Shown here in pieces: positions 10,215 to 38,459 of a stretch of DNA of 64,000 nt. The stretch spans positions 14,756,001 through 14,820,000 of the forward strand of contig OZ286475.1 in the NCBI GenBank assembly GCA_965644265.1, read 5' to 3'. Origin of the DNA: Glycera tridactyla (Eukaryota). The notes under the pieces are model-generated. The model had not been told where the DNA came from. It searched no databases and worked only from the letters and a program-made list of their open reading frames with translations. A program made the translations under genes and the position numbers. Position 1 is the stretch's first letter. Each line of letters begins with the position of its first letter.

Positions 10215-10560
10215 CCCAGATAGCAATCTGACGTCGGGCCGACGTCAATAGACATAGGCAACGTCGACGGTCATTCCGCGGACGTCGGCAGTATGACGTC
10301 GGTCTCTCGACGTCGGTTTGACGTCGTTTTGACGACTGATGAATACATTTTATATCTGTCTGATATACGACGTCTGGCCGACGTCATACCCAGTAAACAT
10401 TTTACTACTGGGCCTCAACTGACGTCAGATCAACAGCGTGTTGCCAACCAATAATTTTACAAGTAATTGGTCAGATTTCGACGTTGGCCCAACATTGATC
10501 CAACGTTGGCAATTCGACGTCAGAATGCCAACGCCGTAAGGACGTCTGCCTGCCGACGGA
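10215..10560. repeat. Left TIR plus subterminal GACGTC repeat array
   Basis: At least ten GACGTC hexamers plus near matches within ~340 bp. Confidence 0.9.
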
Positions 10561-12261
10561 TGACCCTTAATCAATTTTTCCGTGGGAGGCTGTACAGGCG
10601 TGCCCGTTTGAGTGTGCGCTGTGCATTGCAATCAACCTGCCCATGAACCCTCCACTGAGCTGGTAGATAAATGGTTTAGAAACAATTTTTTTGCAGGGTA
10701 GTCGGTTAGACACTGGCCATGCAATCTCCAGGTCAGCGGTTCAAATCTTCCTATTGCCGATCACCCCCGCGCTCCGGACTCAAGTGCGGGGAGCACGGGA
10801 GCGAGAGGCGAATGACGTACTCCCCGTACTCTGGCGATTCCAGCTGCCTAATATGTTAAAAAGTGAATCTGCTTGTGAAAAAGTGTCTTTATTGAAAACC
10901 AGAATGCCAGCCACTTTATACTGTAGATGTATGCTGAGATATTGATGGTCCAGCGTGGCCTACTTGGTTGGACGCTGGCCATGTGATTGATGGGTCCTGA
11001 GATCGAATCCGCTGCCAGATACAAAACTTTTCACTCAGAAACATCTTGATTTTATCTTTAAATTCATTTTGTAATGGAGATATATCCATTTGGGATATCT
11101 TATTTAATGTTCTGAATGAAAAAAACAACATATCATGTATTTTTTGTCATGAAAATCATTCAGTCGCTCCGGGGAATAGAACCCATACTCTCATGGTAAA
11201 ACACCTTCCCGTGCTCAGCGAGCGGTACATTCACATCAGAGACTAACACCGCCCCGTAATCAATTGCAATTATGACGGGCACGGCATGTGACAGTGATAA
11301 TGTGAGTCATCCCGTTATTTGAATAACCTTATACTGCTCCATATGACTAAAATGGCAACAGTTTCTGGGTGAAAAGCTGTGCTGACTCACTTTTCAACAC
11401 TTCAAGTTGCAAAATTATAAATCTTAGATAAATCAAGATGTTTCTGAATGAAAAGTTATTTTCACTTTAGCTGATTTGAACCAGCGACCTGTGCATTACT
11501 TTGCCAGCGCCTAACCAACTAGGCCACGCTGGAACACCCTAGTCCAACTTATGATAGGCCACCAAGATTGTTACACTTGAATAGACTGCCAACTACCAAC
11601 TGGCAGCAATGGGGATAGAAACGCTCGGTGGGGGTTAATCGTCCATAACGCGGGCGGTGAATCGTCCAGAAAAACCGGCGGTGAACTGTCACGGGTGGTG
11701 AATCGTCCTGAGACCATGCCTCTCCAAACCCTAGCGGAGATGGCGGGAACCAGCCAGGCGACCACCTAGCGGGATTCTTTCCCGCGTCACGCGCCAATAG
11801 CCTCACTTATCCAATCGGCAGCTGTGCGTGTGACCGATCGTAGCGCCATCCGAGTCTGCAGCACTGGAGATTAGCCGCGCAGCCGACCGCAGGCGGTTTC
11901 ATTTCGGTAATCAGGGCAACTTTCTCTTTCAAGTTTTGTCAATTCCAGAAGTAGCTGGTCAGTATAATTTTCGTGTGTTCGATCGGGCAGAGTGGGCGTT
12001 TTTTTTTTATTATCGTTGACAATTATTCGCAGGCATATTGTGAAGGTGAATTTGCGATGTTTTCCGTCGGTCTCTTCACTGGGGCGGTCTCGGTGCCAAT
12101 GTTTTCCTTCGGTCTCGTCACTGAGCAGTCTCAGTGCCGCAGCTGAAGTGCGCCTCCGTTGTCTCTGGCATGACTGGGAATGGGACACAAGTTTCAAGTG
12201 ATCTGCTAGGGCCAACGATCTTACGAGGTGTGTTGCAGAATGTCGCCCGAAGTACTTATTA

Positions 12262-13705
12262 CATCTGGGCAGGGATCGAACCCATGTCATCCAGGTTATT
12301 TTCCAAAAGTGACAGTCTTACCCATTGAGCTACCAGTCCATAACACATTCCTTATCCATGAATCTACAGCTGCCTTACCACACAAAATATATATTACATT
12401 AGGTCAAGGTAACAAAATGGCCTCAACCACACAAGAGATTAGAACCAGCATCCCTTGGTATTTTGCTGGGCCGAACAACAGTGATGATGGCCTTAAAAAA
12501 GTGTGTCAGTGGTCAATTGGACATGTGAGTGCCTGATTCTACCTACATTTCAACTGGTTGTTTACTTCCTGGAAAAAATAAATTTGACCTGAGCAGGGTT
12601 CGAACCCATGACTTCCAGGTCATTCTCCAAAAGTGACAGTCTTACCCATTGAGCTACCAGTCCAAAACACATTCCTTATCCATGAATCTACAGCTGCCTT
12701 ATCACACAAAATATATATTACATTAGGTCAAGGTAACAAAATGGCCTCAACCACACAAGAGATTAGAACCAGCATCCCTTGGTATTTTGCTGGGCCGAAC
12801 AACAGTGATGATGGCCTTAAAAAAGTGTGTCAGTGGTCAATTGGACATGTGAGTGCCTGATTCTACCTACATTTCAACTGGTTGTTTACTTTCTGGAAAA
12901 AAATACATTTAACCTGAGCAGGGTTCGAACCCATGACTTGCAGGTCATTCTCCAAAAGTGACTGTCTTACCCATTGAGCTACCAGTCCAAAGGGTACTAA
13001 GCAACTGCAAATCTGAACCTGCTTGACCACACATGATACATTATCCATCAGTTAAGGTAACAAAATTGCCTCAACCACACAAGAGATTGAAAACAGCATT
13101 CTTCGGTATTTTGCTGGGTCAACAACAGTGATGATTGCCTTAAAAAAGTGTGTCAATGGTCAATTGGGCATGTGAGTGCCTGATTCTACCTACATTTCAA
13201 CTGGTTGTTGAATTTTTTGGAAAAAAAATGCATCAGACCTGAGCAGGGTTCGAACCCATGACTTCCAGGTCATTCTCCAAAAGTGACAGTCTTACCCATT
13301 GAGCTACCAGTCCAAAACACATTCCTTATCCATGAATCTACAGCTGCCTTACCACACAAAATATATATTACATTAGGTCAAGGTAACAAAATGGCCTCAA
13401 CCACACAAGAGATTAGAACCAGCATCCCTTGGTATTTTGCTGGGCCGAACAACAGTGATGATGGCCTTAAAAAAGTGTGTCAGTGGTCAATTGGACATGT
13501 AAGTGCCTGGTTCTACCTACATTTCAACTGGTTGTTTACTTCCTGGAAAAAATACATTTGACCTGAGCAGGGTTTGAACCCATGACTTCCAGGTCATTCT
13601 CCAAAAGTGACAGTCTTACCCATTGAGCTACCAGTCCAAAGCACATTTCTTGCCCATGAATCTACAGCTGCCTTAACACACAAAATACATATTCCATTAG
13701 GTCAA
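12262..13705 (-). repeat. ~325-bp tandem array (5 units), each with a 78-nt tRNA-like Pol III unit
   Basis: tRNA-like segments at 12262-12339, 12586-12663, 12911-12988, 13236-13313 and 13560-13637 (periods 324, 325, 325, 324). A box TAGCTCAATGG, B box GGTTCGAACCC or variant, and a T6-T8 run 7 nt downstream in units 2-5. Confidence 0.85.
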
Positions 13706-14280
13706 GTCTTCTCAGACCTTTCCCCGAATTTTACTATGCATTATCTTTCAGGAAAAGTACTCTTCGTCGCTATGGGTTTCCAGAAAACCAATAGCAACTG
13801 AGTACACTACCTATTCTGATATTAAGTGGTCCCATACTTTTATGAAATGGAACCATGGACATAAATATAAGTACATGTAGTATTGAAAAATAGTGATAGC
13901 TGGGAGCCAGTTGATTAATAAATTCATTGAGTTTGTAGCCATAGTAACTTATGTCACGAGATTAAAGCACTGGATGAAGATGAGATGTCATCTTTGACTG
14001 AGCCATCAAGCATACCTAGTAAGATTGAAAAGTGAAAATCTTGCACTGCGATTTCTCAGTCCCAAGTTTCACCAAAGATCTGCCTATGATAATTCAAAGC
14101 AAGCAGATGAACTGCAGAGGATGCCTCCCAATTGTATGGAATTACAGAGATGCCAACCATTACGATTTTGGCCTAATGATTACGATTTTCACCCCAATAT
14201 TACGCCATTACGATCTTGTAGTCAATTATTACGCTTTTTGGAGGTGACTGGTACTGCACGCTGCTACAGTCCATTCCATA

Positions 14281-14455: not shown

Positions 14456-15177
14456 TATCTGAAATCAGGTTGATGAGGACTGAGAGTTCAATGGTTGCCA
14501 GTCATGATGTTGGATCAACGGACGAACTGCACAATGCATCCATGCCATTAAATCTCAAATCGGGCGACATAGACACTGATAGACATGATATTTGATATTC
14601 TGAACCCAAATGATGAGAGAGGTTAGCATGGCTTAGCTGGCAAAGTGTTGGCCGTGCAATCCATAGATCCCCGGTTCAAAGCTGCAAATGCCGCAAAAAA
14701 TAATTCATTTGGAATCAATTTAATTTTTTATGTAATTTATCATTCTACCACCTAAAATGTTGCAAAAAGTGAATCAGAATGTGAAACAATGTCATTAGTA
14801 AAAGAAGAGGAACTTTGAATATTTTGACAGTAATTTCGACAGTATCACACACTTCACTTATTAATGATGACTAAATCGTCATTTGATGAGGATAAAATGA
14901 AACAACTTTTTACCTGTGACCATTCTGAACAGTTTCAACGTGAAAAGTTATGAGTTCATTAGCAGATTCGAACCGGCGACCTGTGGTTTACCTGACCAGC
15001 ATCTAACCAACATGGCCATGTAGGTTACATATTCCATGTTCATGAACATGGTCTGAATAATATTGTCACCCTACACCGGACCATGTGCGTGCATGTAAAG
15101 GTGCGATCACCTAACACCCGGACGGTCGTTCGCTCATCACGACGAGCAGCGCCCTCTGAGTGCGATATGTATTCCAA

Positions 15178-15960
15178 AAGTGACAGGCTAACAATGTGTC
15201 AATGGTCAATTGGACATGTGAGTGTCTGATTCTACCTACATTTCAACTGGTTGTTGAATTTCTGAAAAAAAAATACATCAGACCTTAGCAGGGTTTGAAC
15301 CCATGACTTCCAGGTCATTCTCCAAAAATAACAGGCTAACCCATTGAACTACCAGTCCAAATCATATTCCGTGTCTCCAAATCTGAACTTGCTTCACCAA
15401 ACATGATACATGATCCATTAGTCAAGGTAACAAAATGGTCTCAACAATGGTCTCAACCACACAAGAGTTTGGAACCAACACCCCCCGCATATCGCTGGGT
15501 CAACAACAGTGATGATGGCCTTGAAAATGTGTGTCAATGGTGAATTGGACATGTGAGTGTCTGATTCTACCTACATTTCAATCGGTTGTTGAATTTCTGG
15601 AGAAAAATAATACATCAGACCTGAGCAGGGTTCGAACCCATGACTTTCAGGTCAGTCTCCAAAAGGGACAGGCTAACCCATTGAGCTACCATTCCAAAGC
15701 ATATACTGGGTCTCCAAATCTGAACCTGCTTCACCAAACAAGATACATGATCCATTAGTCAAGGTAACAAAATGGTCTCAACCAAACAAGAGATTGGAAC
15801 CAGCATCCCCCGGCATATTGCTGGGTCAACAACAGTGCTGATGGCCTTCAAAATGTGTGTAAATGGTCAATTGGACACTTGAGTGACAGGCTAACCCATT
15901 GAGCTAGCAGTCCAAAGCCTATTCTATGTCTCCAAATCTGAACTTGCTGGGTCAACAACA
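15178..15960 (-). repeat. More diverged continuation of the ~325-bp tRNA-like array
   Basis: Full 78-nt units at 15281-15358 (T9 run) and 15618-15695 (T5 run), and a truncated unit at ~15885-15912. Confidence 0.8.
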
Positions 15961-16073
15961 GTGTTGATGGCCTTAATTATGTGTTTCAATGGTCAAATGT
16001 GAGTGTCTGATTCTACCTACATTCCAATGCTCAATCCGCTAGGCCTCACATGCTAATTGTCTTTTATTTCTAG

Positions 16074-16540
16074 GACTGTTCATCTGACCATTGACACGAC
16101 TCAGTGGCCAGTCTGGCCTAGTTCGTTGGATGCTGGACGCTGAACTCTCAGGCTCCCAGTTCCACTCTGCCGAAAGCAGTGAGTGAATTTTTGTCGTTTT
16201 TTGGGTAGATAAACTGTTCGGAATTGCATTTTTTAACAAGATATCAAAGCATTATTGATAACTCACTCATACAAATACATATATTGATTAATAACAAGGA
16301 TGTGATACTTGCATTAATTATGAATTAACTTTGTTTTGCACCAGCATTACTTGATCACTAGCAATCTTAGTGTTAGATGGCTAGTGCGTAACCCACTGGG
16401 CAATGCATGCTAATAGATTTTTATTTCTAGGACTGTTTATCTGACCATTAACGGACAACGAGTCAGTGGCCAGTGTGGCCTCCTAGGTTGGATGCTGGAC
16501 GCTCACCCCTCAGATTCACAGTGCCACTCTTCCGAAAGCA
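16074..16540 (+). other. Two tandemly duplicated putative non-coding exons (16074-16178 and 16431-16540)
   Basis: Both have acceptor ttttatttctag|GACTGT and donor GAAAGCA|GTGAGT. Lengths are 105 and 110 nt, and copy 1 has stops in all three frames. Confidence 0.5.
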
Positions 16541-16796: not shown

Positions 16797-17012
16797 CAGG
16801 GATTGTTTTACACTGTGCCCTGTGCTAAATGGAACATAAAGTTATGGAAGGGCACATTAAATTGCATATATTGTGCCAAGAAGGCACATATGATCATTCA
16901 TACTTTGATATAATTACAAGATCTGAGGCGCACACGAATCCGAAATGACACATGGAATTTGCATCAATGTGCCTGAAAGACCCATACATATTCCCAAGTA
17001 AGAAAATCCCTG
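16797..17012 (+). mobile_element. Third copy of the CAGGGA MITE family
   Basis: CAGGGAT...ATCCCTG termini and similarity to 23-238 and 1244-1455. TSD not recognisable. Confidence 0.65.
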
Positions 17013-17824
17013 GCTTGTTGAAGTAGTCGTGTCACAGCCAGGACTGCTTTCCACAAACGGAACAAGGAATACATGCAGTATACGATGAATCTGATGACTT
17101 GTATACAAGAATCCAAGTTGATTTGATAAAATAGTTTAAACAATGAAAGATCAGCCGACTTCTCCTCTCACACAACGCGACATGTATGGAGAAAGCCTGT
17201 TGAGGCTAAACATAGTGTATGAAATATAATTCTGACCAAGTTAATGCAAAAATAGATTCGTCAAACTCGCCCTGTCTGAGCAGCTGAGCAATGTTAAATC
17301 CAGGAAACTTCCACTGCAAATGGAAGTTCGGCACAAGGGAGCCTCCATGTTTGCTTGTCAGCCCTTTTTTGAGACAGAGCCAAGCCAAGTCGATCATTGC
17401 ATTTGAGGGAGATGTAGAAGAGACGATCTACGTGAATGCTTTCATGGGGCAAACGGATGAACAGAGGCTATCGGGATATTCGCACTGAGTTTGAAATTGC
17501 ATTTTTACTCCACTGTCATATGATCTTGCTTTTATCACATGGATTAGTGGATAAGTTATCACATGCAGTACTAAACATCTGATACTGTGCTGAAAATGTC
17601 ACCTCAACAGATACCACAGAATGCACTTACATGGATAACAGTGAGTCCATAAGTGTCCATAAAAATGTAACTGTGCACCAAATAATATAATCAACTGGTT
17701 ATGATTAACAAAAGTGCAACCTACCACATTTCTCTGGAAATGAACACTGGTAATATGTTATTACTGGATTTTTTTTAAGGTGGAAGCTATCCAATAAGTA
17801 AAGATGAGTCAGATGTGAATCAGG

Positions 17825-19861
17825 ATGGCAGGAATTGATGAGATAGGAAAAATATACTGCAGAAGAACTTTGAAGAGGCATGCAAACAAACGAGTTGAGT
17901 GCCTCCTGTCCAGAGGTGAGGACGATAACGTTGCAGGTACCTCTGAGACTTCACCAAAAGTTCTTGAACTGCCTGAAGAAGATCACACAGAGATTGTAAA
18001 TCACATGTCAGAATTGCATTGTGAGGATGAGTATGGCGCTCAAGTGCAAGCTGAACTTATTTCTCTAGATCTTGACGCCACTTCAAATTCTTAGTCGGAC
18101 TGTGATGTGCTCAGTGATTCGGATTGTGATGACAAGGCAGAAGATACGATATATAAGGACCTGAAAGAGTGGGCTGCTGACAATGACATTCGGCATTCCC
18201 ATCTGAATTCCCTCCTAAGAATTCTGAAACCGTTCTTTCCCTCTTTGCCACTAGATGCACGTACATTACTGGGAACACCAACAACCTACCAGGTCCAACA
18301 GATTGGTGGTGGAGCGTACCATCACTTTGGTGTAGCTAATAACGTTATTCATAGGGTGGAGGCATTACGAAAAATACATGAGACTGATACTCTGACATTA
18401 CAGGTCAATGTGGATGGCTTACCACTGTTCAAAAGTACCAATGAACAATTTTGGCCAATACTTGGTTGTCTACTTGAAGACCCCTCCAAACAACCATTTA
18501 TCATTGGCCTATTTCTTGGCACAAAGAAACAGATTGATGCGAATGAATACCTTCGTCAGTTTGTCGATGAGATGATGCTGTTAGAAGAACAGGGGATTGA
18601 TATAAATGAAAAACATTACATTCTCAAAATTGGCAATTTTGTTTGTGATGCACCAGCCCGTGCTTTCATTAAGCGAATCAAAGGTCACACTGGATATCAT
18701 GGATGTGAGAAATGCACGCAAAGTGGTGAGTGGGTTAACAACCGAATGACATTCCCAGATATGAATGCTCCCAAAAGAACCAATATCGCCTTCGATGACA
18801 TGGACATTGAAGAGCATCACCATGGCCCTTCCTCTCTCTCACAGCTAGGAGTTGGCTTAGTAACTGGTTTCCCTCTAGATTATATGCACTTAGTTTGCTT
18901 GGGTGTTATGAGAAAGTTGCTAAATCTCTAGCTCAAAGGACCTCTATGTGTTTGTTTAGGTAGCCGACTTGTTGGATTGATTTCAGATCAGCTGAATCTT
19001 TTCAAAAGTTACCTTCCACATGATTTTTCACGGAGAGGGAGGTCTCTATTGGAGTTGGACCGATGGAAAGCAACCGAGCTGAGAACATTCCTACTTTACT
19101 CAGGACCAGTGGCTTTGAAAGGAAATGTTTCTGATGCTGTTTATGGCAATTTCCTGATGCTCCATGTTGCAATAAGTATACTAGTGCAGGGCGAGTTTTG
19201 TGAACTCTACCTCGACTACGCTCGGCAACTTCTGACTCTATTTGTCCAAAATTTTGCAGATATCTATGGTCATGATATGCTCGTTTATAATGTGCACACT
19301 TTAATTCACTTACCTGATGATGTCTTGCGTTTTGGACCATTACAAAATTTCTCCTGCTTCCACTTCGAAACATATTTGCACATGATAAAGAAGTTGATAA
19401 GGAAACCAAGGTACCCTATGCAACAAGTCATCAGGCGAGTTGATGAAAAGAAGTTTCTTGAAGCCAAATTGAGAGAGAAAGAAACAATGCTGAAAAAAAA
19501 ACATCATGCAGGTCCTTTGCCGAATAACTTCCCACACTGCATCCAGTATAGTGAGGTGAACCTAGAGAGTTACATGTTGTCAATCTCACAACCAGACAAT
19601 GCAGTACTAAGTAATGGAGAGGTATACCTCATACGCAATATTGTCATGCTTGGTGACTTAGTTCAACTTGTGTGCAGCCAGTTTCAATTCAAGGAATCTT
19701 TCTATCAATACCCATTGGATTCTTCAAATCTGAGAACTTACTTTGTCAGACACCTAGATCGCCACCTATGTACTATCAACATTGGCGATGTCACTGGCAA
19801 GATGGTTCTTCTTCCTCTGAGAGATGGATTAGTTTCAATTCCATTAAATCACACATTGTGA
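17825..19861 (+). pseudogene. CMC/EnSpm-type transposase, single 679-codon frame broken by two in-frame TAG stops
   Basis: ORFs 17825-18094, 18107-18931 and 18977-19861 share one frame, with stops at 18092-94 and 18929-31 (LLNL*LKGP, probably TGG>TAG). Motifs VNVDGLPLFKS, QFWPILG, CDAPARAFIK, GHTGYHGCEKC, PLDYMHLVCLG, RWKATELRTFLLY, YNVHTLIHL. Confidence 0.9.
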
Positions 19862-20229
19862 AAAATTTGATTGCCAAGAGTCACTCTGGACAAGGTGTGG
19901 TGTGCAGAAATCCGCTGCAGTGCATATTGTCAGGTTTTCCGTATGATTGATTTTTGAAAGAGTTACTTTTGTGTAAGACCTCTCTGTAATTACTGATACT
20001 TATCCAAGCTTTGCTCTCAAAACTGTATTTGGCCAAAGAAATGCATAAGAAGCAGTTCCCCCACAAATTCTATGATATGTGCTTTTCCCTCCATTTCTCA
20101 TTGAAACGAGTGTCATGGCAGGCTCTAACCAGGGACTAGCAACCTGTATGCGTAGTGATGTAGTCTCTGCCCCCTGAGGTAGGCACTGCCCCTGTCCTAC
20201 AACTGCACATTGCTGATCCCAAGATTGAC

Positions 20230-25205: not shown

Positions 25206-25268
25206 CTTACCATTCATTATACGGTGGCTGCCAAATTGACCTTACATTGGTGTGAACCTGTACAGGAA

Positions 25269-28200
25269 ATGCCATATGCAGTTGTGGAGTTTAAAGATGA
25301 GGATGATGCGGTGGACATGGTGCCAATGTGCTGGCTGCCCAACAACAGCCAGTGCATGTGGCCTCCCTCACATCTCCTTGGACGACTACAGCAGATGAAG
25401 ATGAGAGAGCAGCGGCCAGACGAGACCTGGACGCCCAATCGTGTAGTCATTCTCTGTCAGAGCGGTGAGCCTAATCAGATCATCTGCTGTATAATGATTT
25501 GAATCAACAGCTCATCTCCTAATCTGTATCCACATCATTTTGACAAAATTACTAGATTCATCACATCACACAAATGGGATGTCATTGCTGAATCAAGAGT
25601 CAGCGATAATTGGTTTAGTAAGAGTAATAATTTGAGCATTTGTAACAGCAGCAACAGCAGCAGTAGTGCAGTGTATACCTTCTATTTCGAACCTAGAGTT
25701 CTATTGACTTCATTTCTCAGAAGAGGTACATTTGACTGATTGTATTGGTATGTATGTTTGTTTGTTTGAGTTTAACGTCACTTGAACCCATGTGTCCCAA
25801 GTAAAGGGCATTCCACAATATAGCATCCCTACCACTATGTATGTTTTTTCTTTGAATTGCAGCAACATACGAAGGAGCTAGAAAAAAACTGCGAAAGGCG
25901 ACAGAAACTTCAGACCTCGACACCACAGATGACGATGTCCTTCGAAAAAGAAGGTAGGTAAATCCATGAGGTGTTTTTTGTTACAAACAGGATTTGTATC
26001 AGAACCTCAGTTAGGTCATTGAGATTATGTGCACTGAAATGTATTCACCAATGACTAGTGACTCATGACAAGTGCCAATTATATTCATGGAATGGAAATA
26101 AATGGCTTACATGTTATTCTTTGGTGATTTGGAAGGTCTAAGTGGCCTAGTCTCAAGTCAATCGTGAAAAAACATGTTTTTTGAGAATGTCTCCCATCAT
26201 AATTCAGTCCAAGGAAATACAGAACATGAAAGACCATCGATGCCATCACTAACATGACCACCATTGCCACGGACACTGCCAACACCACCACCGGACCCCT
26301 ACCACCACCATTGGTTGAGAAAGGGTGGAGAATGGTGAGAGATGGGTGGGAGGAAGGGATTGCACGAGGAGGGAGAGGAGGAGGGTTGGAGAAGAGACGG
26401 AGAAGGCTTGGCTGGTCACATATCTAGTTTCACCAAGAAAATAACGATAGCAACTCTGTTTTTAGATATGATATGTCTCTCTCCCCAGCTTCATTTTCTG
26501 TCACAAACTCATTTTTCATGAAGATGACATTTAGACTCCTCTAATTAACAAGGGATGGTGTAGTATTTGTGACAAAGTGTATGGCCCCTATCCCAGACTA
26601 TCACCAGTAGCATTCATGTTTATTTTTCAGACCCACGCAGTATAATACTGTTGAGGAAGAAGAGCCACGTAAGAAACAAAGAAGGGCTACTTCAAAGCCT
26701 TTGCCGCCTCCTCCGGTATTCACAACATCAATCTCAAGTAATGCACCTAGCTTCTCGCAACCTGACTCTGCAAATGCACAAGGTAATTTTCATAATTTCT
26801 GTAAACCTAAACATCACACAAACATACACCAACAGTTACCGGCATGAGGTTTCACATCAAGCTTTGAAGTGCTTAGTGAGAGTGAATGTTACTCACTACA
26901 CCATGATTGCAGGTAAAAGATGGTTTCCTCAATGATTGCGAGAAATGGGAAAGCCAGCAACAAAATTGCGAATATTGTAATGCAAAAATAAGTTACTTGT
27001 CTTTTGTAGTATTCACATTTTAAACAGTGAACTAATAATGATAAGTATAACGTTAGGTCACATATTTCAGTTTCTACTTTGTCGCGAGGTACTTTTCTGT
27101 GTCTGTTCAAAGGCAGCCATGCTTGTAACTGTGTAATTCCTGGTGCGTTGCATGGTATATTAGCCCAGATTTCATCTTTAAATTGCTTCTGTACACATCT
27201 TGATTTCTGACTGAATAAGGGGAAATGCAATGCTGGCCTGCTTGGTAGGCAACTCATCAGCATGTGCTTGGCATTATTGTGAAGAACATGCAATGTACAT
27301 GGTGGTAACATTCAAGGTTCTCACCCCAGGTTTCTTGGCAGAAAAATAATTTTTATAGCATTCTCCAATATTTCTCCCATACTGCCGGGCTGATGACATG
27401 GGATGGGAATATTTGTATCAATAATATCTTTTAATTTCTTTTTCTATATAGATTAGGTATCTCTAGTTGGTTTGGCTGTATATTCTAAATGCTGGCATAT
27501 ATTGGGATGTTAGCTGAATATCATGACAGTGGATTTCCTTTTGCACCATAAATGGTTCATCAATTCTCTTCACAGCAGCTGTTATTAGCAGCTGAATAAT
27601 GTTATCATTTTTCTTTCAATTAAGGTCCTTCACCGAGGACATATGCAAGTGCAGATTCGCCACAGGCTCCCTCAATTGATCTAAGTGGTATGTATTATCG
27701 TGTTCATAATACAAAGAATATGTCAGGACATATGTCATGCTTCCAGACCGAATGAAAGCAATCAAAAATGGAACAGAATATCAAGAATTGAAATGGTTGA
27801 CGAAGCAACGGGAGGTGAACTAATGCCAGATGTCAGATATGAGCTAGATCAATAACAAAAATAATTAGATCCATGGGATGGATAATTGATGTGAATTTCA
27901 TATGAAACACACTATGTTGTGATGTTGACTGTGATCATCAGATCTGTGGGGCATCAGTGCTGATACCTCATCCCTCAGTAATTGACATCTGCCTGAATTA
28001 TAACCACCTTATGTACATGTTACAGAAAGAGATAGGGTCATCTTGCAAGCCCTCGAGGAAATCAAAGGCCAGGTCCGTCAAAACACGCTATTGCTCCAAG
28101 CAATTACCAAGCAGCAGGAGCCACTCAGGGCAAGATCAACTCATGAGCTGTCCTTTCCCATGTCCACCATCGATGACACCACTATTGTGGAGGCTGCGCT

Positions 28201-29911
28201 TCTTGATAGGGGGATAAGAAAGGCACTGGTAAGGTATTGATTCTACTCTGGTGATCAACTTCATTGAAGTACATACTCACATGAGTACCAATGCGTATAG
28301 TAAACTGCTCCAATTGGGTTGATAAAATCTCATTCCTGAAGTTTAGCCACCAGTTTGGCAACCATGCTTGTTTGCTTTTAGCTTGCATGAACAGGAAACT
28401 CTGAGTGCCAGCCAGGTCATTCGAGGAAATAGCAATTGGAAATGGTTTATATGTGCTGAACAACTTTGACTGGCAACTCCTCACTCTATCTCTTGGTTAC
28501 AAGACAAAGTGACCGATTACAAATGATTTTTGTTTTATGACTGTCTTTCTGTCAGTAATATGTCTTGGGTGTTACATGTCTACAATCAACCATCATCCAT
28601 TATTCAGGAGAAGCGAATAGTATGCTGAAAAGGATTTACTTTCAGATGACTGAATTGGCCAGCCTAGGTGGTGTGAACTGTAGTGATTGTGTACAGAGGA
28701 TTATGATCCATGTGATGACAAACGGTTTGGCCTGCCAGTTCAATTGGAAGGGGCGTGGAACCAAGTCAGCATTCACAAAACTGACCCTTGCGAAAGTTGT
28801 TAAAGGTAAAATCTTTTCTCTCCAATGCCCATTTCACAGGTGTCTCAATGTAGCTTGGATGGCGCTCATGAGATGTCATACAGTCAAGCAACAAGCTATG
28901 AATAGAGCTAGGTGAAATCTGTGTTCTTATATCCACGGATAATTTTAGATTTGCTTCTATGACACTTGCTGGTGGCTATACTGATAAAACCATGCTGAAT
29001 GGCAAGCCAACATCAGCATGGGTATGCTTACATGCTTGTCTAATGGGGCCCCAACGAAAGGCACGCTTTACGTTGTGGGTCGTCAACCAATTAAACCCTC
29101 AAGAGTAATTGCAAGGTCCGTCCTTGGATGATGGCTTGGTTGGATGGCGGATCAGTCATTTGGTTGGCTACACACATCACAAGAAGTCAGAAGTATGGAC
29201 TGCAGACATTGTGTATGACGAAGGGAAAGAAGAAGGTCGAGCATCCTAATTTCTGTCCACAAAATTCATAATCTCACTGCACTGCCTGATGATTTAGATG
29301 CAATGTCTCATAATAGGGCGAGGATGAACACATATCTTAACTTAGAACTCATTCATTTCATAGATGCAGCAAGGAAGAATGGATACACTGACGCATTAGT
29401 GGAAGAACGCATCAAACGGTGGCTGAAATATGCCGGAGATTGTGACGGGGGCAGGATGAGGAGGGTGACACCCAGCACTGGTAAGCTATGCATCAATAAT
29501 CATGAAATAATTGTCATATACAGTTGGACCTGCTTGAGAGATAACCCCTCCATAAAGATCATCTGCCTACAACAGCCACCAGGAGCTACAATTTCAAAAG
29601 TATTTTCAGCAGTTGGCCTTTATGAACAGAGTTGACATAGATGGCTGTATCACCACTGTTTCATATACAAATATGTGCCAACAATGCCGGTGGATTCGCC
29701 AAAAAAAACAACAATGAAATGATGGTGCATCCTCTTCAAAAGCATGCAGATTAGCTGAAATCAGGTTCAATGATCACCGGAAGGTCTATATATTCCATTT
29801 GTGCCATTGAAACTGAAATTGGACAAAAAATGGTGAATGATATGCTGTTGGTTTGTTGTAGTGATCCCTCCTCCTGTTGATGAGACGTCAGATGAAGATA
29901 GCTCTAACTGA
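25269..29911 (+). CDS. Intact 8-exon transposon accessory gene, DUF4806-like, 343 aa
   Basis: Exons 25269-25464, 25863-25953, 26631-26782, 27625-27687, 28026-28228, 28646-28805, 29364-29480, 29862-29911. All introns are GT-AG with matching phases (1,2,1,1,0,1,1), giving 1032 nt with no internal stop, and AATAAA lies at 29984. N-terminus YAVVEF...VPMCW...WPP and C-terminus LASLGG...RIM...FNWKG...K..F..L...IKRWLKYAGD.DGGR match my recollection of DUF4806 proteins (needs HMM confirmation). Confidence 0.8.
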
Positions 29912-30434
29912 TACATGGATGCATCGAAGACATGATTGATACACCTGATTGATCGATTGATGAAGAGTTATGTATCATTGTGGAATAAATTTGGGATATG
30001 TAAGAAGATCTTGGTCTTGTTTGATAAACTACTTAGCCAGTTGATACATGTCTCCTCAACACAAACCACCACACCCACCACCTGTCATGCTGCTGTCGTC
30101 AACACCACCACCACCACCACCACCACCACCACCACCCAACTGCCACCACGACTGTCGCTGCCACTACCACCATCACCACCACTATCTATGCCGTCGCCAC
30201 CACACCAACCACCACATACCTAGCTAGCGAGTCCCCGAGGAAATGTTTATACGTATTAGTCAACCCTAGTGATGATTTGACAAAGTATACTCTAGCCCCT
30301 TAGTTCAAGATTTAAATATGGGGCTATTTGAACCACATGTGAAGGTGGGTTAGATTCAGGAAATTTGGCCAGGTTTCGGGAAATAATGTCTTAGTGCACG
30401 TGATTCATGGACGACTGCCAGTAGCTGTTGGTGT

Positions 30435-33400
30435 CCTGCGTGGCCTAGTTGGTTAGACACTGGCTGAGTAATCAGAACGAAGTGGTACGGTGCACGACTA
30501 GTCGGTTGGGAATACATATCACAACAGAGGGCGCTGCTCACCCAACTTTTCGTGCGAGGAGCAGGCCCACGATCACACGGTTGGGCGCCGAACCTTTGAT
30601 GAGGTCGGGTGGTCAGGTGTTATGAGGTCGGGTGTTAGGTGCACGTACGTGGTCGGGTGACAGGTGGAAGGGTGACAATATTGGTCAGACCATGTTCTGC
30701 AACTTTATTTTATTTGTAATCTGTGTGGCCAAGTTGGTTAGATGCTGGCCAGGTAAACCACAGGTCGCCGGTTCAAATCTGCTAATGGACACATAAATTT
30801 TCATCCAGAAACATCTTGATTTTATCTATAATCCATCATTTCACTGCCTAAACTGTTAAAAATGTATGTGTACTTGGTGAATTGATTAATTGAATTCCTA
30901 CTACTCATATTTTACATTTTTTCACATTTTTTTATTCAGGATCATAATCAGAATCATAATTGTTTTGCGATGATTATTTTGTTAACATTTTTGTTTCAGG
31001 TTTGTCTGGAGAATAGATCTTCGAAATTATAATGATGATCATTGGGTTTTGGAGCTCTCTTGATGATAAGATCATCATAAATAAATGGCAAAATGAGAAA
31101 AAAAAATCCAGATGCTAGCAGATTTGAACAGGGGAACCTTAATTTGCCAGGCCAGTGCCGCGGGAAAGGAGGATAATGCGTCTGTATGAAAAATCATCTT
31201 GGTCAGTGGCTGAATTGAACCGCCGACCTATTGCATACATAGCCAGTGCCTAACCAAGTAGGCCACAGGTCTTCTGGGGAACTTAACATCATAATCAACC
31301 ATTAAGATGTTTGAAATAGTTCTGATACCACACAGTGTGTGTAGAATTGAGGGAATGCCAGCCACTTTGATGTGCATACTGCTTCTGTTGATCATGCAAT
31401 AGAAAGAGGGACTGCTGCGCGGGCTACATTAATCATACATCTACTGCTTAGAATTCCATTTTTTGACAAGATATCTAATTGTCCAGGTTTACATGGGAAC
31501 GAGAGGAGATGACACCTGACATCAACTCACTTCACTTTACGACTGACCTCCAGAACATGGTCTGGTTAATATTCATGATGATCAGGTCAGTAAGGCTTGA
31601 TTTCTTGGCCTAGTTGGGTAGACATAGGCCAAGTAATCCGTAGGTCGCCGGTTTAAACCCCCTAATGAATGCATCAATTTTTATTCAGAAACATCTTTAA
31701 TTTATCATTTTGCTGCCTGAAATATCTTTGCGGTGAGTAGTGTCATTGCCTTTCGCCCACCAATCTGCCTTAATCAAGTACGGGGTGGGGGGAAGGTGTT
31801 AATCTTTGATGTGAGTGCATGTCACCTATCACTCCCATGCTCTCCGTAATCGAGTGCGGGTGGTGTTTTCAACGAGATCATTATCATGAACTTGATGTGT
31901 CAGATATTGTCAAACTTTAGCTTCATATATCTGATCCCCATGGATGTTAAGGAGGTCATGTTCTGCAATTGAACAATTTGGATCCTGCATGGCCCAGTTG
32001 GTTGGGCACTGGCCATGTAAGCAAGAGGTCAGCGGTTCAATTCAGGGACTGGCTTGGATAACTTTTCATACAGAAACATTACCTGTGGCCATTCTAAACA
32101 GTTCAAAAGTGAAGAATTAGATATCTTGTTGAAAATTATAAAGAAAAATCGGGATGGCCCATTTCACCACACCATGTGAAAAAATGTCCATTGAAAAACC
32201 AGAATGCCAGCTACTTGACATAATTTTCAGTGATCCTGGCCATTCAATCTTCGGTTGAAGGTTTGATTCCCGCATCAACTTTTCAATAGTCATTTCTCCC
32301 ACATAGTGCCTCACTTTCTGCAATAGAAATAATGCGGGACTTGTTTATTGTGCAATATTTAGATTAGATATCTTGTTGAAAACACTTCCACTCTGTACTC
32401 GAGCACGGGAGCAGTGAGCATGGGAGTGAGAGGCAATGACACTACTCACATCAGAGACATTTCCGGCAGCAAAATGATAAATTATGTATGAAACATAGAT
32501 GTTTCTGAATGAAAATTCATACTTATACTAGGGGATTTGAACCGGCGACCTATAGATTACTCGGCCAGCATCTAACCAACTAGGCTACACGGGACACGGG
32601 CTATTTCATGGTCTAGCCAATATCCATTGTGATCAGGTGTTAGTCAATGTGATCTTTAGGTTGCCGGTTCAAACCTGTTGATTGACAAAAAACTGTTCAT
32701 CCAGGAACATCTTGATTTTATCTAAAACCTATTGTTTTACTGCCTAAAATGCTAAAAAGTGAGTCAACGTGTGAAAAAATATTTTCATTGAAACCTCAGG
32801 AATTCTCCATCACTTTACCAACTTGGCCACGCAGGTCACAGTTGCAGCAAAGTTTCAGAACATGGTCTGGTTGATATTCATATACAAATAGTTTATTTGT
32901 ACCTTACCAACAATACATGACTATATATATGCAATGAAATGCCCGTGAGTAACACAGGCCTGCATGGCTTAGTCGGTTAGTCACTGGCCATCCAGTCATC
33001 AAGTCGGCGGTTCGACTCCCCTACCAGTCACCTAATTTTTTTCATGATGATCCGCCAGATCAGTGTTTCAGCATCTCTCTATTCCCAAAAATGGTGTTTG
33101 TGAGCGAATTGCCATTTTATCTATGACATCATCATTTAATGAGGATAAAATGAATGTTGTGACCTGTTGGCATTCAAAGCAGTTTCAAAGTGAAAAAGTG
33201 ATAGATCTTTGAAGGATTTGAACCGAGTCTTTCAGAATAAAGAGACAGCAGCCCAACCATATAGGCTACATGTTCATCAGGTTTGTTGGGCAAAAACTGA
33301 GTGTAGCTTCAATGGTCTGTGTGCTTCCTCGGGTACAAGCGGTCTCGGAACATTTCTCTCCCATATTTGCCAATAGTTAATATAACAAGATATCGCATTT

Positions 33401-35705
33401 TATCCCCATAAAATGATAATGTCATGGTTAAACATATGTTGAAATATCAGGGAATGGTCTTGTGAATATTGATGTTCAAGAGGAGCATTCCTTCGTGGCC
33501 TAGTTGGTTAAACGCAGGCCAGGTAAACGACGGGTGGCCGGTTCAAAGCTTCAATGATCTGGATATATTTTTGTGGTAAGACGGCCTTGGCCGGATTCCA
33601 CATTCAGGGCAAGTGCTTCGCTGAGATTGCAAAACGGTGGTGTTTGTTTATCTGGAATTGAAAGGGTCCTACCAAGTGAGGGAATGCCAGCATTTTGAAC
33701 TCCATTCAGGGTATGACTGAATAGATGAAAAATATATTGTTCGATTTGGGTGACCGAAATTGGATGTTATTTTACCAATATGCAATGATACAGAGACAAA
33801 GGTGAACAATTTTTGACATTCGTGGGCTGCCATAAGCTGACATGGGATACAGAGAGTGCATGAAACTCTCGACCACTTTACAAATATTCATTCATACAAG
33901 CAAGGTAGACCATCAAATTATCAAATGGCATGCATGTTGTTTGTTTATTGTTAATGCAAATAGAAGCTGGCATAGGATTCACATTTGGGCTATTGACTGA
34001 GATTGTTTATGGAATTTCACTCCAGTAACACCTGGCATATTAAAGGCTTCAGCAGCACTTCCTGTACATGCTTGTGTGTTGGTCAGTGCAGGTGAGTTAG
34101 GTCAGCGTGCTCATTTCAGTATGTACTCAGTGTTCAACTCTGTTCCAGGTTCAGATGCCTTGCGCACATTCCCATAGCTCTGTACTAACTGGGCCTTACT
34201 TCCTATCCCCTATCCCCTATCCCAACTGTGAATGAAACTGACTGTAGGCACACAGTCGGCTGTCACGCCTCCCCCTCCTCAAGCTCACTGGAGCTAGAGG
34301 GGTGGCTGGCAGGCAGGGCGCACCAGTCAGACTAACGCAGGCCACCACCGCCACTGCTGGGCACAACACACGCTGTCCAACACCTGAGCCGGAACAGCAT
34401 CTTGTAAACACAGTACACATGGTCCCACCACATGGACTTCTATTGTACGTTGTATCTCACCCATTTACTGCTGCTTCTTACTGTGTGTGTGTGTGTGTGT
34501 GTGGGTGTGTGTGGGTGTGTGTGGTGTGTGGGTGCGTGTGTATGCCCACCCTCCTACCCATCCACCCACATACACCCTCACCCAGCTAATCACCCACCTA
34601 CCCATCCAACCACCCACCAACCTACCCACCCAACTACCCACCCACCTACCCACCCACCTACCTAACCACCCATCTACCTACCCACCCACCCACCCACCAC
34701 CCACCTACCAACCCACCTACTGACCTACCCACCCACCCACCTACCTGCCCTTCTGCCCATCCACCTACCCAACCACCCACCTATGCACCCACCTACCCAC
34801 TCACTTAACTACCCACCCACCCACCTACCCACCAACCTACCCACCCAGCTACCAAGCTACCCATCCATCGACTTACCCATGCCTACCTACCCAACTACCC
34901 ACCCACTTACCTACCCACCCATCTACCCAACTACCTACCCACCCAACTACCGCCACACCCATCTACCTACCCACCTACCCACCCTCCTACCCACCCACCT
35001 ACCTACCCACCTACCTACCCACCCACCACCCACCTACCCACCTATATATTCACCCACCTATCTACTCACCCACCTACCTACCCACCCACCTACCCACCAA
35101 CCGACACCCACCCACCTACCCACCATCCGACCCACCAACTAACCACCCAACCATCAAGTTCATCCGCTTGCCGCTTACCATTTCAGGCCTACAGGCCTAG
35201 TTACTTGTTTTGTCGTTTAGTTATGATGATCTTATCATCTAGACGGCTTCAAACACAGTGATTAAGTGTAGAAATTTTGTTTTTGAAGAGTCCTGAGATC
35301 ACGATGGTGAACTTATTGTAATGGCCAAACTGGCAAGGTTGCTGCATAGCTACACAAAAAACTGCCGGTTCTAACCCCCAATAGATATAAAAAAAATTCC
35401 ACTCAGAAACTATCTAGAATTCCAATTTTCAATGGAATTCCATATTTCAGGCGTTCCTCTTTTTCACAATGTATGATACATTATGCATGATCAAATACAT
35501 GAAGTCGGTCTATACATGCCATTTGTAATGTTGATATATATCTATGTTTCGTTTTCATATCACTTTTTAACATTTTAGGCAGCAAAATGATGAATTACAG
35601 ATACAATCAAAATTTTTCTGAATGAAAAGTTATAAGTCACGTGGCAGATTTGAACCGGCGACCTATGCATTACACGGCCAGCGTCGATCCAATTAGGCTA
35701 CGAGT
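30435..35705. ncRNA. Right-arm tRNA-Thr-like Pol III modules (about 30437+, 30724+, 31210-, 31605+, 31988+, 32530-, 32962+, 33212-, 33494+, 35643-)
   Basis: Same A-box/B-box consensus and spacing as the left-arm modules. Several share the downstream body CAGAAACATCTTGATTTTATCT. Confidence 0.6.
34480..35200 (+). mobile_element. Repeat carrying a long (CCCA/CCTA)n tract and ending ...CAGGCCTAG|T (Helitron-like)
   Basis: The unique 3' segment CCAACCATCAAGTTCATCC...CAGGCCTAGTT recurs inverted at 53438-53495, and homology stops right after CTAGTT. Left boundary approximate. Confidence 0.45.
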
Positions 35706-35964
35706 GGCCATCGAAATCTACGAACGCGTCTAGAGGATGAAGGGGCTGGCATTCTGATCAGTGGTCGGGAGACCCGCATGATCTGTGGTCGGGCGAGTAT
35801 GTCCACCCGATCAGCGATTGAGGGGTCCACTCGACCAGTGGTCATGTGGGCAGGTGCATGCAGGTGAGCTGGCTCCGCACCTGACTATTCATACCGTTAT
35901 ACCCTACACTGTACAAGTGGATGCTCACACGACTCGTCGTCCGCCCAAACCAGACCTAAACCTA

Positions 35965-36177
35965 GCGTCGGATTGACGTCGGATTGACGTCGGATCGACG
36001 TCAGACTGACGTCGGTGCAACGTCAGCCTGACGTCAGGCCGACGTCAAGGGCCGACGTCGTCACGACGTCGGGCCGATGGACAAAATGACGTCGACCCGA
36101 CGTCGGAGGTCGACGTAGGGCCGACGTCAGAGACGACGTCGGGCCGACGTCGGGCCAACGTCAGTTTGCTATCTGGG
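35965..36177. repeat. Right subterminal GACGTC array plus TIR
   Basis: Consecutive 11-nt units such as GGATTGACGTC, GGATCGACGTC, AGACTGACGTC, AGCCTGACGTC, AGGCCGACGTC, ending ...TTTGCTATCTGGG. Confidence 0.9.

Positions 36178-38268: not shown

Positions 38269-38325
<57 letters not shown>

Positions 38326-38406: not shown

Positions 38407-38459
<53 letters not shown>

What the first reader, a model, noticed from the sequence alone, without database searches (positions are those of the whole stretch)
10215..36177. 26-kb CACTA/EnSpm transposon carrying four genes and arms full of Pol III tRNA-like units
Seen: a 32-bp TIR pair (29/32), a matching AG dinucleotide on both flanks, GACGTC arrays inside both ends, a CMC-type transposase, an SGNH hydrolase, a DUF4806-like gene, a decayed antisense gene, and more than 20 tRNA-like A/B-box units confined to 10.7-15.9 kb and 30.4-35.7 kb. 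Established: CACTA/EnSpm elements make 2-3-bp TSDs, have subterminal repeats and encode a transposase plus an accessory protein. Inference: this is one very large element with a modular cargo (esterase plus small-RNA cassettes), a combination I do not recognise from described elements.
Basis: partly seen in the sequence, partly recalled or inferred. Interest (0 to 1): 0.88.

Follow-up and report, generated by a model that had tools for sequence, protein, structure and literature searches.

The report
Large CACTA-type transposon, repeat-swollen arms
This is one 26-kb copy of an already described animal branch of the CACTA/EnSpm DNA transposons (the "TRC" type), recently disabled, made unusually large by duplicated tRNA-derived repeats in both arms, and carrying one extra esterase-like gene that four relatives lack.

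Summary
A 29/32 terminal inverted repeat bounds 10215-36177, with AG on both flanks. ACGT-core arrays with 11-bp phasing sit inside both ends. Between them lie a transposase with two stop codons, an intact SGNH-like ORF and a multi-exon third gene. About 30 repeat units with A and B boxes are confined to the two arms.

The backbone is not new. It belongs to the animal "TRC" clade of the CACTA/EnSpm superfamily: termini start CCC and the target duplication is 2 bp (DeMarco 2006). Patella, Haliotis and the fish Alosa hold elements with the same terminus (CCCAGRTAGCA), the same 11-bp subterminal repeats and the same gene order, transposase then third gene. The transposase keeps the D-D-E triad with C(2)C and H(3)H motifs, and a family model folds like RAG1 and Transib. 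The third gene is DUF4806/BEN-like only through its orthologues.

The tRNA-like units are not tRNA genes. They match no Rfam tRNA model and have no significant fold. They spread by DNA duplication rather than retroposition. Pol III activity is untested. The SGNH ORF has no detectable relatives and is absent from the four related elements. The "decayed antisense gene" could not be found. Verdict: a new member of a known kind, moderate interest.

The parts
10213..10214 (.). Left copy of the putative 2-bp target-site duplication (AG)
   Evidence: 2-bp matches also flank the small element at 36896-37659 (TC), the Haliotis element (AT) and a 57-bp mini-element in a metagenome contig (TG). The Patella L002 and Alosa elements show no match.
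10215..10246 (+). Left terminal inverted repeat, starting CCCAGATAGCAA
   Evidence: 29/32 match to the right end. The terminus is unique in the window and conserved in 13 ends from at least five sources.
10230..10546 (.). Left subterminal array: 14 ACGT cores, mostly GACGTC(G)G, often as GGGCCGACGTC
   Evidence: CpG observed/expected is about 1.0 here against 0.3-0.5 in the interior.
10690..11540 (.). Family-A tRNA-derived units (10700+, 10955+, 11527-). The unit at 10900-11061, plus 60 nt upstream of it, mirrors 35595-35756 in the right arm
12265..13706 (-). Family-B tandem array, 4.4 units of 324 bp, each with an A box, a B box (GGTTCGAACC) and an internal TTTT run
   Evidence: ARAGORN calls tRNA-Pro(tgg) at 12584-12664 and 13235-13313. 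Their folds are no better than shuffles.
14646..16027 (.). Second copy of the [A pair + B array] module: A units at 14646+ and 15072-, B units in 15195-16027
   Evidence: It has the same order as 10.9-13.7 kb, which indicates a segmental duplication inside the arm.
16028..16500 (.). Two 357-bp units with an A-like head (family C)
   Evidence: families D8, D9
16797..17018 (.). Nested copy of a dispersed short repeat, also present at 23-244 and 1243-1443 outside the element
17825..19864 (+). Transposase gene, about 680 codons, with two in-frame stops (18092-18094, 18929-18931). All catalytic and zinc-motif residues are kept
21334..22374 (+). SGNH/GDSL-hydrolase-like ORF, 346 codons, intact. A possible short first exon lies at 20941-21003, spliced to 21430
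   Evidence: No relatives were found, and it is absent from L001-L004.
25269..29635 (+). Third gene (accessory, DUF4806/BEN-like by orthology). Exons at about 25269-25450, (26632-26715, weak), 28022-28231, 28646-28810 and 29360-29464
30325..33571 (.). Right-arm cluster of about 12 family-A units in both orientations
33599..35202 (.). Nested repeat with (TG)n and (CCCA)n runs, an inverted copy of 53438-56831. A weak RT-like match lies at 33850-33945
35367..35756 (.). Outermost right-arm A units (35367+, 35701-), mirror image of 10900-11061
35966..36162 (.). Right subterminal array: 16 ACGT cores, 12 of 15 spacings exactly 11 bp
36146..36177 (-). Right terminal inverted repeat
36178..36179 (.). 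Right copy of the putative 2-bp target-site duplication (AG)

Best explanation
The interval 10215-36177 is a single cut-and-paste DNA transposon of the animal TRC clade of the CACTA/EnSpm (CMC) superfamily.

Shown:
- The ends are 32-nt inverted repeats starting CCCAG. They are followed by phased 11-bp subterminal repeats built on GGGCC plus a hexamer, here GACGTC.
- The core is the family's conserved gene pair on one strand. The first gene is a transposase with a D-D-E triad plus C(2)C and H(3)H motifs, and a model of a 51%-identical family member has a RAG1/Transib-like fold. The second is a multi-exon accessory gene.

Inferred mechanism:
- The transposase nicks at the CCC termini and integrates with a 2-bp stagger.
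- The accessory DUF4806/BEN-like protein binds the palindromic subterminal repeats and brings the ends together, as TnpA does in maize En/Spm.

State of this copy: it cannot move on its own, because its transposase has two stop codons. It decayed recently, because 73 of 78 checked near-invariant residues and all catalytic residues are intact.

Why it is so large:
- The arms were inflated by DNA-level duplication of modules that each contain a decayed tRNA-derived head (A box, B box, T run).
- A few copies of dispersed repeats are nested in the arms.
- A 5.4-kb spacer between the two core genes holds an intact SGNH-hydrolase-like ORF.

The SGNH ORF is a lineage-specific passenger of unknown role. 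At least one tRNA-derived unit per arm is old enough to be mirror-symmetric between the arms, so it probably travelled with the element.
For: - TIR, flanks and arrays.
- Same terminus, same repeat type and same order (left end, transposase, third gene, right end) in Patella (two 99% copies that define the left end), Haliotis (a 6-kb element) and Alosa.
- 2-bp flank matches in 4 of 6 complete elements. This compares with 7 of 14 for SmTRC1 (PMC1636069).
- The transposase family is large: 11,095 representatives at 50% clustering, typically about 680 aa, from metazoa. 27 of 32 members touch Pfam DUF4218 and 2 touch Transposase_21.
- D202, D279, E518, C298-x2-C301 and H494-x3-H498 are kept in the window copy.
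- The family model (pLDDT 84) matches only RAG1, RAG1-like and Transib chains in its top 49 PDB hits, best E 1.6e-8. This agrees with the CMCT signature in PMC12730594.
- Third gene: orthologous Patella and Haliotis exons hit DUF4806 across consecutive profile halves. DUF4806 is described as a BEN subtype.
- Arm repeats are arm-confined: 56 left-left, 34 right-right and 24 left-right matches, and no family-A or -B unit outside the element. The only arm-to-flank matches are nested dispersed repeats.
- The [A pair + B array] module is duplicated.
- The outer units are mirrored, including 60 nt upstream.
- Unit similarity runs past the T4 run and upstream of the head.
Against: - No second copy of this element from the same genome could be examined, so neither mobility of the whole 26 kb nor co-transfer of the SGNH ORF and the arm repeats is shown.
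- A 2-bp flank match has a 1/16 chance on its own, and two of six related elements lack it.
- Pfam hits for the transposase, the SGNH ORF and DUF4806 are all below the curated cut-offs.
- DNA binding of the third protein to the subterminal repeats is pure inference.
- The A and B boxes are the best-conserved 10-nt windows among 14 family-A copies (0.89 and 0.91 against a mean of 0.58). Plain neutral duplication does not predict this.
Confidence: 0.78

Rival explanations
1. The arm units are working Pol III-type elements that the transposon carries on purpose. They would be TFIIIC-bound boundary elements or small-RNA genes that shield the element's genes from silencing or feed a small-RNA pathway.
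For: - Each family-A unit has a tRNA-gene anatomy: an A box, a B box about 32 nt later, and a TTTT run about 27 nt after the B box.
- The two boxes are the most conserved windows among the copies.
- Units sit in both arms on either side of the genes, and one per arm is mirror-symmetric.
- B-box and TFIIIC sites and SINEs acting as chromatin boundaries are known elsewhere (PMC8136502, PMC10530723).
Against: - No Rfam tRNA match at E<=1 and no significant fold.
- Family-B units have a TTTT run between the boxes.
- Four related elements have none of these units.
- There are no expression or binding data.
- Box conservation could instead be inherited from a transcription-competent SINE source.
Confidence: 0.1
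2. Family-A and -B units are ordinary tRNA-derived SINEs that retroposed into the element after it landed. The clustering would reflect a local insertion preference or relaxed selection.
For: - The heads start at a tRNA-like 5' end and the boxes are conserved, as in SINE families.
- Other dispersed repeats did nest in the arms.
- Copies differ by 14-29%, as old SINE copies do.
Against: - About 30 units lie in 14 kb and none in the other 50 kb of the window.
- Family B is a head-to-tail tandem array.
- The [A pair + B array] module is duplicated as a block.
- Similarity extends beyond a T4 run and upstream of the head.
- No flanking duplications or A-rich tails were seen.
Confidence: 0.12
3. 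The SGNH ORF is not cargo of the DNA transposon. It is the leftover esterase gene of a nested retroelement, like the esterase ORF1 of CR1, L2 and RTEX or the GDSL ORF3 of some LTR and Penelope-like elements.
For: - GDSL/SGNH esterases have been captured repeatedly by retroelements (PMC5408684, PMC3905857).
- The spacer between the core genes is 5.4 kb here. It is 0.2-2.2 kb in relatives.
- The ORF has a basic C-terminal tail.
Against: - No reverse-transcriptase remnant lies anywhere in 19.9-25.3 kb.
- No LTRs or other boundary repeats surround it.
- It has no sequence similarity to any solved esterase or to the neighbouring RT-bearing element.
- It lies on the same strand as the two core genes and may have its own short first exon.
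Confidence: 0.15
4. The two termini belong to two separate short TRC elements that happen to face each other, and the 26 kb between them is ordinary host DNA.
For: - Short non-autonomous TRC elements exist right next door, at 36896-37659, and in metagenome contigs.
- A 2-bp flank match is weak evidence on its own.
Against: - The interior holds exactly the family's gene pair, in the same order and orientation relative to the ends as in three other species.
- The two ends match each other 29/32 and differ from the neighbouring small element.
- The arms share repeats and a mirrored unit.
Confidence: 0.04

Closest known systems
SmTRC1 and the animal TRC elements of the CACTA superfamily (DeMarco et al. 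2006, PMC1636069)
   Same: Termini start CCC (Tribolium CCCTAGTAGCACC.., Aedes CCCAGTCAAC). The direct repeat is 2 bp and is seen in only about half of the copies. The transposase is Transposase_21-related. Sizes run from 4.5 to over 9 kb, and tandem repeats lie inside.
   Different: This copy is 26 kb, has a clearly separate second gene, carries an SGNH-like ORF, and has arms full of tRNA-derived repeat modules.
Spongebob / EnSpm-4N1_HM of Hydra (PMC4298943)
   Same: The TIR is CCCAGCCAACATTGAC, with the same CCCAG start and the same CCAACATTG motif seen in the Patella and Alosa subterminal repeats. The TSD is 2 bp, and it is classed as a TRC-type CACTA element.
   Different: It is a 5.8-kb, high-copy element without an identifiable intact transposase. 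No extra gene or tRNA-like arrays are reported.
Maize En/Spm (canonical CACTA): TnpD transposase plus TnpA, which binds 12-bp subterminal motifs (recalled from general knowledge, not tested here)
   Same: Two-protein logic, many short subterminal repeats inside both ends, CpG-containing binding motifs, and large size.
   Different: Maize En/Spm has CACTA termini and a 3-bp TSD. Its accessory protein is unrelated in sequence and both products come from one alternatively spliced unit. Here the genes are separate.
RAG1 / Transib / CMCT clade (PMC12730594)
   Same: [quoted passage not shown] The family model superposes on the RAG1 core, BbRAGL and HzTransib.
   Different: Transib makes 5-bp TSDs and has different termini. 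Sequence identity to RAG1 is only about 10%.
Esterase-carrying retroelements (CR1, L2 and RTEX ORF1; Vesta ORF3; Athena/Terminons; PMC3905857, PMC5408684)
   Same: A mobile element carries a GDSL/SGNH hydrolase with all catalytic blocks intact.
   Different: Those are retroelements and the esterase is part of their replication proteins. Here the host is a DNA transposon, the ORF stands alone, and no homology to those esterases was detected.

Membership tests
CMC / CMCT transposases (CACTA-Mirage-Chapaev-Transib) | [quoted passage not shown] | tested here: met
   Family alignment A1 shows D202, D279, C298-x2-C301, H494-x3-H498 and E518 nearly invariant. All are present in the window copy. The definition comes from PMC12730594.
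CMC / CMCT transposases (CACTA-Mirage-Chapaev-Transib) | RAG1/Transib-like catalytic core fold | tested here: met
   An AF2 model of family member P0003 (51% identical to the window copy, pLDDT 84.3) has RAG1, RAGL or HzTransib as all of its top 49 PDB hits. Best E is 1.6e-8, TM 0.44-0.54 over about 550 columns. The model is of a relative, not of the window protein.
CACTA/EnSpm superfamily (Pfam Transposase_21 / DUF4218) | Match to Transposase_21 (tnp2) and DUF4218 | tested here: inconclusive
   The window piece hits DUF4218 at E 0.01. 27 of 32 family members hit DUF4218 (best E 3.8e-6, at the cut-off) and 2 of 32 hit Transposase_21 (E 0.012). Almost all are below the curated cut-offs.
Canonical (plant-type) CACTA | CACTA at the termini and a 3-bp TSD | tested here: not met
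   The termini are CCCAGATAGCAA. The flanks share 2 bp (AG) and not 3 (CAG against AGG).
Canonical (plant-type) CACTA | Multiple short subterminal repeats in both ends, and a second accessory protein | tested here: met
   14 and 16 ACGT-core repeats lie in the two ends. The third gene is conserved next to the transposase in four species.
Animal TRC clade of CACTA (DeMarco 2006) | TIR begins with CCC | tested here: met
   All 13 aligned ends begin CCCAG. The definition comes from PMC1636069.
Animal TRC clade of CACTA (DeMarco 2006) | 2-bp target-site duplication | tested here: met
   AG/AG here, TC/TC at 36896-37659, AT/AT in Haliotis and TG/TG in L007. Patella L002 (CT/TA) and Alosa (TT/TA) do not match. 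The published rate for SmTRC1 is 7 of 14. No empty site was available.
Animal TRC clade of CACTA (DeMarco 2006) | Transposase similar to the SmTRC1 ORF | not tested
The paper reports strong matches in sea urchin, Ciona, zebrafish and Aedes, which overlaps the taxa hit here.
Mirage superfamily | 2-bp TSD with a Mirage-type transposase | not testable with these tools
   The TSD length fits, but no Mirage reference sequence or Repbase library is on hand. One family member weakly touched the C. elegans family DUF1258 (E 0.023).
DUF4806 / BEN-type DNA-binding domain (third gene) | Match to Pfam PF16064 | tested here: inconclusive
   The window exons give no hit even at E<=10. Patella exon e3 gives E 6.9e-5 (23.5 bits against 25, profile 36-81), Patella e2 gives E 0.045 (profile 2-35) and Haliotis e3 gives E 0.0058. 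The domain is split by an intron, so no single reference covers it. The PDB profile search was empty.
SGNH/GDSL hydrolases | Four conserved blocks (GDS, G, GxND, DxxH) and a Pfam match | tested here: inconclusive
   The blocks are read directly: YIGDS, GIGGS, CGSND and DRVH, in the right order and spacing. Lipase_GDSL_2 gives E 2e-6 and Lipase_GDSL E 3.9e-4, both below the cut-offs. There are no homologues and no PDB relative, and the AF2 single-sequence model is unusable at pLDDT 36.
tRNA genes | Cloverleaf recognised by a covariance model | tested here: not met
   There is no RF00005 match at the gathering score or at E<=1. Fold z-scores range from -2.0 to +0.3. ARAGORN calls two family-B units only.
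tRNA-derived SINEs | Internal A and B boxes, plus retroposition marks (own TSDs, a 3' tail, dispersed copies) | tested here: inconclusive
   The boxes are present and are the best-conserved windows. But the copies are arm-confined, partly tandem, and duplicated as blocks, and similarity runs past a T4 run. No TSDs or tails were seen.

The most novel reading that the evidence does not exclude
This TRC lineage has built arrays of TFIIIC/Pol III-type promoter modules into both arms. They would act as a portable chromatin boundary or small-RNA source around its genes. It also carries a working SGNH esterase as adaptive cargo. That would make it the first DNA transposon known to travel with its own tRNA-like insulator arrays and an esterase module otherwise seen only in retroelements.
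Probability: 0.08. Interest if true: 0.75.

Novelty: new member of a known kind. Interest (0 to 1): 0.35.

Why it matters
The finding shows that the animal TRC branch of CACTA transposons has a strongly conserved end architecture from molluscs to fish. That architecture is a CCCAG terminus plus 11-bp phased GGGCC-hexamer repeats. The hexamer changes by lineage, often keeping its palindromic symmetry (GACGTC, AACGTT). The branch also has a conserved two-gene core whose second protein is probably a BEN-type DNA binder. This gives a concrete, testable protein-DNA pair for a poorly studied transposon group whose transposase folds like RAG1. The SGNH ORF and the tRNA-derived arm modules are curiosities. 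They would matter only if other copies show that they are stable parts of the mobile unit.

Tried and rejected
- SGNH ORF: the homologue search found nothing, the PDB sequence search was empty, the single-sequence AF2 model was useless at pLDDT 36, tblastn found no paralogue in the window or in the related loci, and the exact look-up was not in the collection.
- Third gene: a homologue search with the best exon found nothing, partly because of the length window. Pfam on the window exons was empty. A four-species exon profile against the PDB returned noise.
- 'Decayed antisense gene': 24 minus-strand stop-free stretches between 11.9 and 28.5 kb were scanned in Pfam, with only chance-level hits. 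I considered a THAP-like reading of 24534-24704(-) and dropped it.
- Nested retroelement around the SGNH ORF: no RT remnant and no bounding repeats.
- tRNA identity of the units: Rfam at the gathering and E<=1 thresholds and single-strand folding were all negative.
- tRNA-like units or SGNH in relatives: none in L001-L004.
- Source organism: not identified. No transposase relative exceeded 53% identity, and exact look-ups of five window ORFs failed.
- Empty-site test inside the window: the flanks have no second copy.
- The metagenome scan with the TIR gave three true but very short contigs and two bacterial chance matches.


Full report
**1. What is there**

Bases 10215-10246 and the reverse complement of 36146-36177 match at 29 of 32 positions. 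The first 20 nt (CCCAGATAGCAAWCTGACGT) occur nowhere else in the window, with zero expected by chance. The bases just outside are AG on both sides.

Inside each end lies a dense array of ACGT-core repeats. Thirteen GACGTC sit in 10230-10541 and thirteen in 35975-36146, out of 29 in all 64 kb. On the right end, 12 of 15 spacings are exactly 11 bp, and the repeat often reads GGGCCGACGTC. CpG observed/expected is about 1.0 at the two ends and 0.3-0.5 in the interior.

**2. Genes**

- **Transposase.** One reading frame from 17825 to 19861 encodes about 680 residues, broken by two stop codons at 18092-94 and 18929-31.
  - The 274-residue piece finds 11,095 cluster representatives, typically about 680 aa and at most about 53% identical. 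They come from fish, molluscs, arthropods and unnamed metagenome contigs.
  - The window copy keeps 73 of 78 checked near-invariant residues, including all of these.
  - This is the signature given for the CACTA-Mirage-Chapaev-Transib group (PMC12730594).
  - Pfam support is weak but consistent: 27 of 32 members hit DUF4218 and 2 of 32 hit Transposase_21.
  - A family model (pLDDT 84) has RAG1, RAG1-like or Transib chains as all of its top 49 PDB hits, best E 1.6e-8.
- **SGNH ORF.** The 346-codon ORF at 21334-22374 is intact and shows the four SGNH blocks. Its Pfam GDSL matches fall just below the cut-offs. A short upstream exon with a GT donor (20941-21003) and an acceptor at 21429/21430 would keep the frame. 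I found no relatives by any route.
- **Third gene.** It runs from about 25269 to 29635 in at least four exons.
- **Fourth gene.** The claimed decayed antisense gene could not be found.

**3. Related elements elsewhere**

- **Patella.** Fetching the DNA around relatives of the transposase gave two 99%-identical copies from Patella caerulea. Their similarity starts exactly at CCCAGGTAGCAG, and one of them ends at ..CTGCTACCTGGG.
- **Haliotis.** Haliotis rubra holds a 6-kb element.
- **Alosa.** The fish Alosa alosa holds a 17-kb element.
- **Shared features.** All have the same terminus, 11-bp subterminal repeats of the form GGGCC plus a hexamer (AACGTT in Patella and Alosa, AGCATT in Haliotis), and the same order: left end, transposase, third gene, right end.
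- **What this settles.** The two ends in the window therefore bound one element, and the third gene is a core gene of the family.
- **DUF4806.** The Patella and Haliotis exons of the third gene hit Pfam DUF4806 in consecutive halves of the profile. DUF4806 has been described as a BEN-type DNA-binding domain.
- **What the relatives lack.** None of the four related elements contains an SGNH ORF or any tRNA-like unit.

**4. Which known kind**

DeMarco et al. (PMC1636069) defined animal "TRC" elements within the CACTA superfamily. Their TIRs begin CCC, and a 2-bp direct repeat is seen in 7 of 14 SmTRC1 copies. Tribolium ends read CCCTAGTAGCACC.. and Aedes ends read CCCAGTCAAC. The Hydra element EnSpm-4N1_HM (Spongebob) has the TIR CCCAGCCAACATTGAC and 2-bp duplications (PMC4298943).

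The present element fits this clade. Four of the six complete related elements seen here have matching 2-bp flanks:

| Element | Flanks |
|---|---|
| Window, 10215-36177 | AG/AG |
| Window, small 764-bp element 36896-37659 | TC/TC |
| Haliotis L003 | AT/AT |
| Metagenome L007, 57-bp mini-element | TG/TG |
| Patella L002 | CT/TA (no match) |
| Alosa L004 | TT/TA (no match) |

It is not a canonical CACTA element, because it has no CACTA core and no 3-bp duplication.

**5. The arms**

Self-comparison shows that the repeats are confined to the arms. There are 56 left-left, 34 right-right and 24 left-right matches, and no family-A or -B unit lies outside the element. The few arm-to-flank matches are nested dispersed repeats, and the 12-kb core is otherwise unique.

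- **Family A.** About 19 units of about 150 nt have a decayed tRNA-like head and occur in both orientations.
- **Family B.** This is a 324-bp tandem array at 12265-13706, with a second, more diverged array at 15195-16027.
- **Family C.** Two 357-bp units follow family B.
- **Not tRNA genes.** Rfam finds nothing even at E<=1, and folding is no better than shuffled sequence.
- **Spread as DNA.** The left arm repeats the block [A pair + B array] twice. Similarity among units runs past a TTTT run and about 50 nt upstream of the head. The outermost unit of each arm, with 60 nt upstream of it, is a mirror image of its partner in the other arm.
- **Box conservation.** Among 14 family-A copies, the two best-conserved 10-nt windows are exactly the A box (0.89) and the B box (0.91), against a mean of 0.58. 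Neutral duplication does not predict this. It could be inherited from a transcription-competent source, or it could reflect present function.
- **Nested dispersed repeats.** Other parts of the arms are copies of repeats found elsewhere in the window: 16797-17018, 33599-35202 and 20868-20929.

**6. How it most likely works**

Shown:
- a RAG1/Transib-fold DDE transposase with all catalytic residues;
- conserved CCC termini;
- phased subterminal repeats;
- a conserved second gene.

Inferred:
- The transposase cuts at the termini and integrates with a 2-bp stagger.
- The BEN-like protein binds the subterminal repeats, whose hexamer changes by lineage while often staying palindromic, and helps pair the ends. 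This role is like that of TnpA in maize En/Spm, which I recall from general knowledge.

This copy needs a transposase supplied in trans. The SGNH ORF has no assignable role. Esterases of this fold are recurrent passengers of retroelements (PMC3905857, PMC5408684). Here no retroelement remnant surrounds it.

**7. Verdict**

The backbone is a described kind. The claim of a modular small-RNA plus esterase cargo is not demonstrated, because no other copy from the same genome could be examined. The most novel reading that remains open is that the tRNA-like modules are functional Pol III/TFIIIC elements carried by the transposon. I give it about 8%.

Noticed in passing
window 36896-37659: A second, small (764 bp, no ORF) TRC-type element lies 720 bp right of the big one. 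Its TIR is CCCAGATAACAT.., its subterminal units are CCAATGCTGG/CCAGCATTGG like those of Haliotis, and its flanks are TC/TC.
   Followed up: yes
window 37113-43284 and 43283-49383: A tandem segmental duplication of 6.17 kb at 99.4% identity. Its left breakpoint lies inside the small TRC element. Each copy carries an intronless ORF on the minus strand with 3-4 CUB domains plus a trypsin domain (40807-43272, 46971-48797).
   Followed up: partly
window 7422-9653 (+): An intact 743-codon ORF with a reverse-transcriptase domain (RVT_1, E 2e-30) ends 560 bp before the left end of the transposon. It is probably a young non-LTR retrotransposon.
   Followed up: no
window 57890-58662: A very homogeneous 26-bp tandem array (29.7 copies, 99% matches). 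The unit contains the inverted pair GAGACC..GGTCTC.
   Followed up: no
window 53438-56831 and 33599-35202: A right-arm stretch of the transposon is an inverted, 72-77% copy of a region in the right flank. That region contains (GTGG)n, CGT-rich 33-bp repeats and several masked N runs. A weak RT-like match lies at 33850-33945.
   Followed up: partly
L004 (Alosa alosa) 3596-3619 and 20801-20824: Two different TRC right ends are each followed by the same 10 nt (TAGGCTAYGT), and the second element starts 30 bp after the first end. This suggests repeated use of one site or a duplication that involved an element end.
   Followed up: no
L001 (Patella caerulea) 5632-5645: The left flank of one Patella copy reads CCAAGATAGCCA just before the terminus CCCAGGTAGCAG. 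It resembles a decayed terminus of another element, so this may be an insertion next to an older end.
   Followed up: no
window 23337-23420 and 24464-24605: A short stretch is duplicated about 1.15 kb apart (81-94% in pieces) in the spacer between the SGNH ORF and the third gene. Each copy lies next to a (GT)n run. No coding signal was found.
   Followed up: partly
L006, L007, L009 (contigs JAAUYI01...): Three short contigs in the metagenome collection carry termini 91-97% identical to the window's over 27-34 nt but have different interiors. L007 holds a complete 57-bp mini-element. They are probably from an animal related to the source of the window.
   Followed up: partly
window 10215-10570 and 35950-36177 against the interior: The CpG-containing repeats at the ends have kept their CpGs (observed/expected about 1.0), while the interior of the element is CpG-depleted (0.3-0.5). 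In the young Patella copies many repeat units already read CAATGTTGG or CAACATTGG.
   Followed up: no
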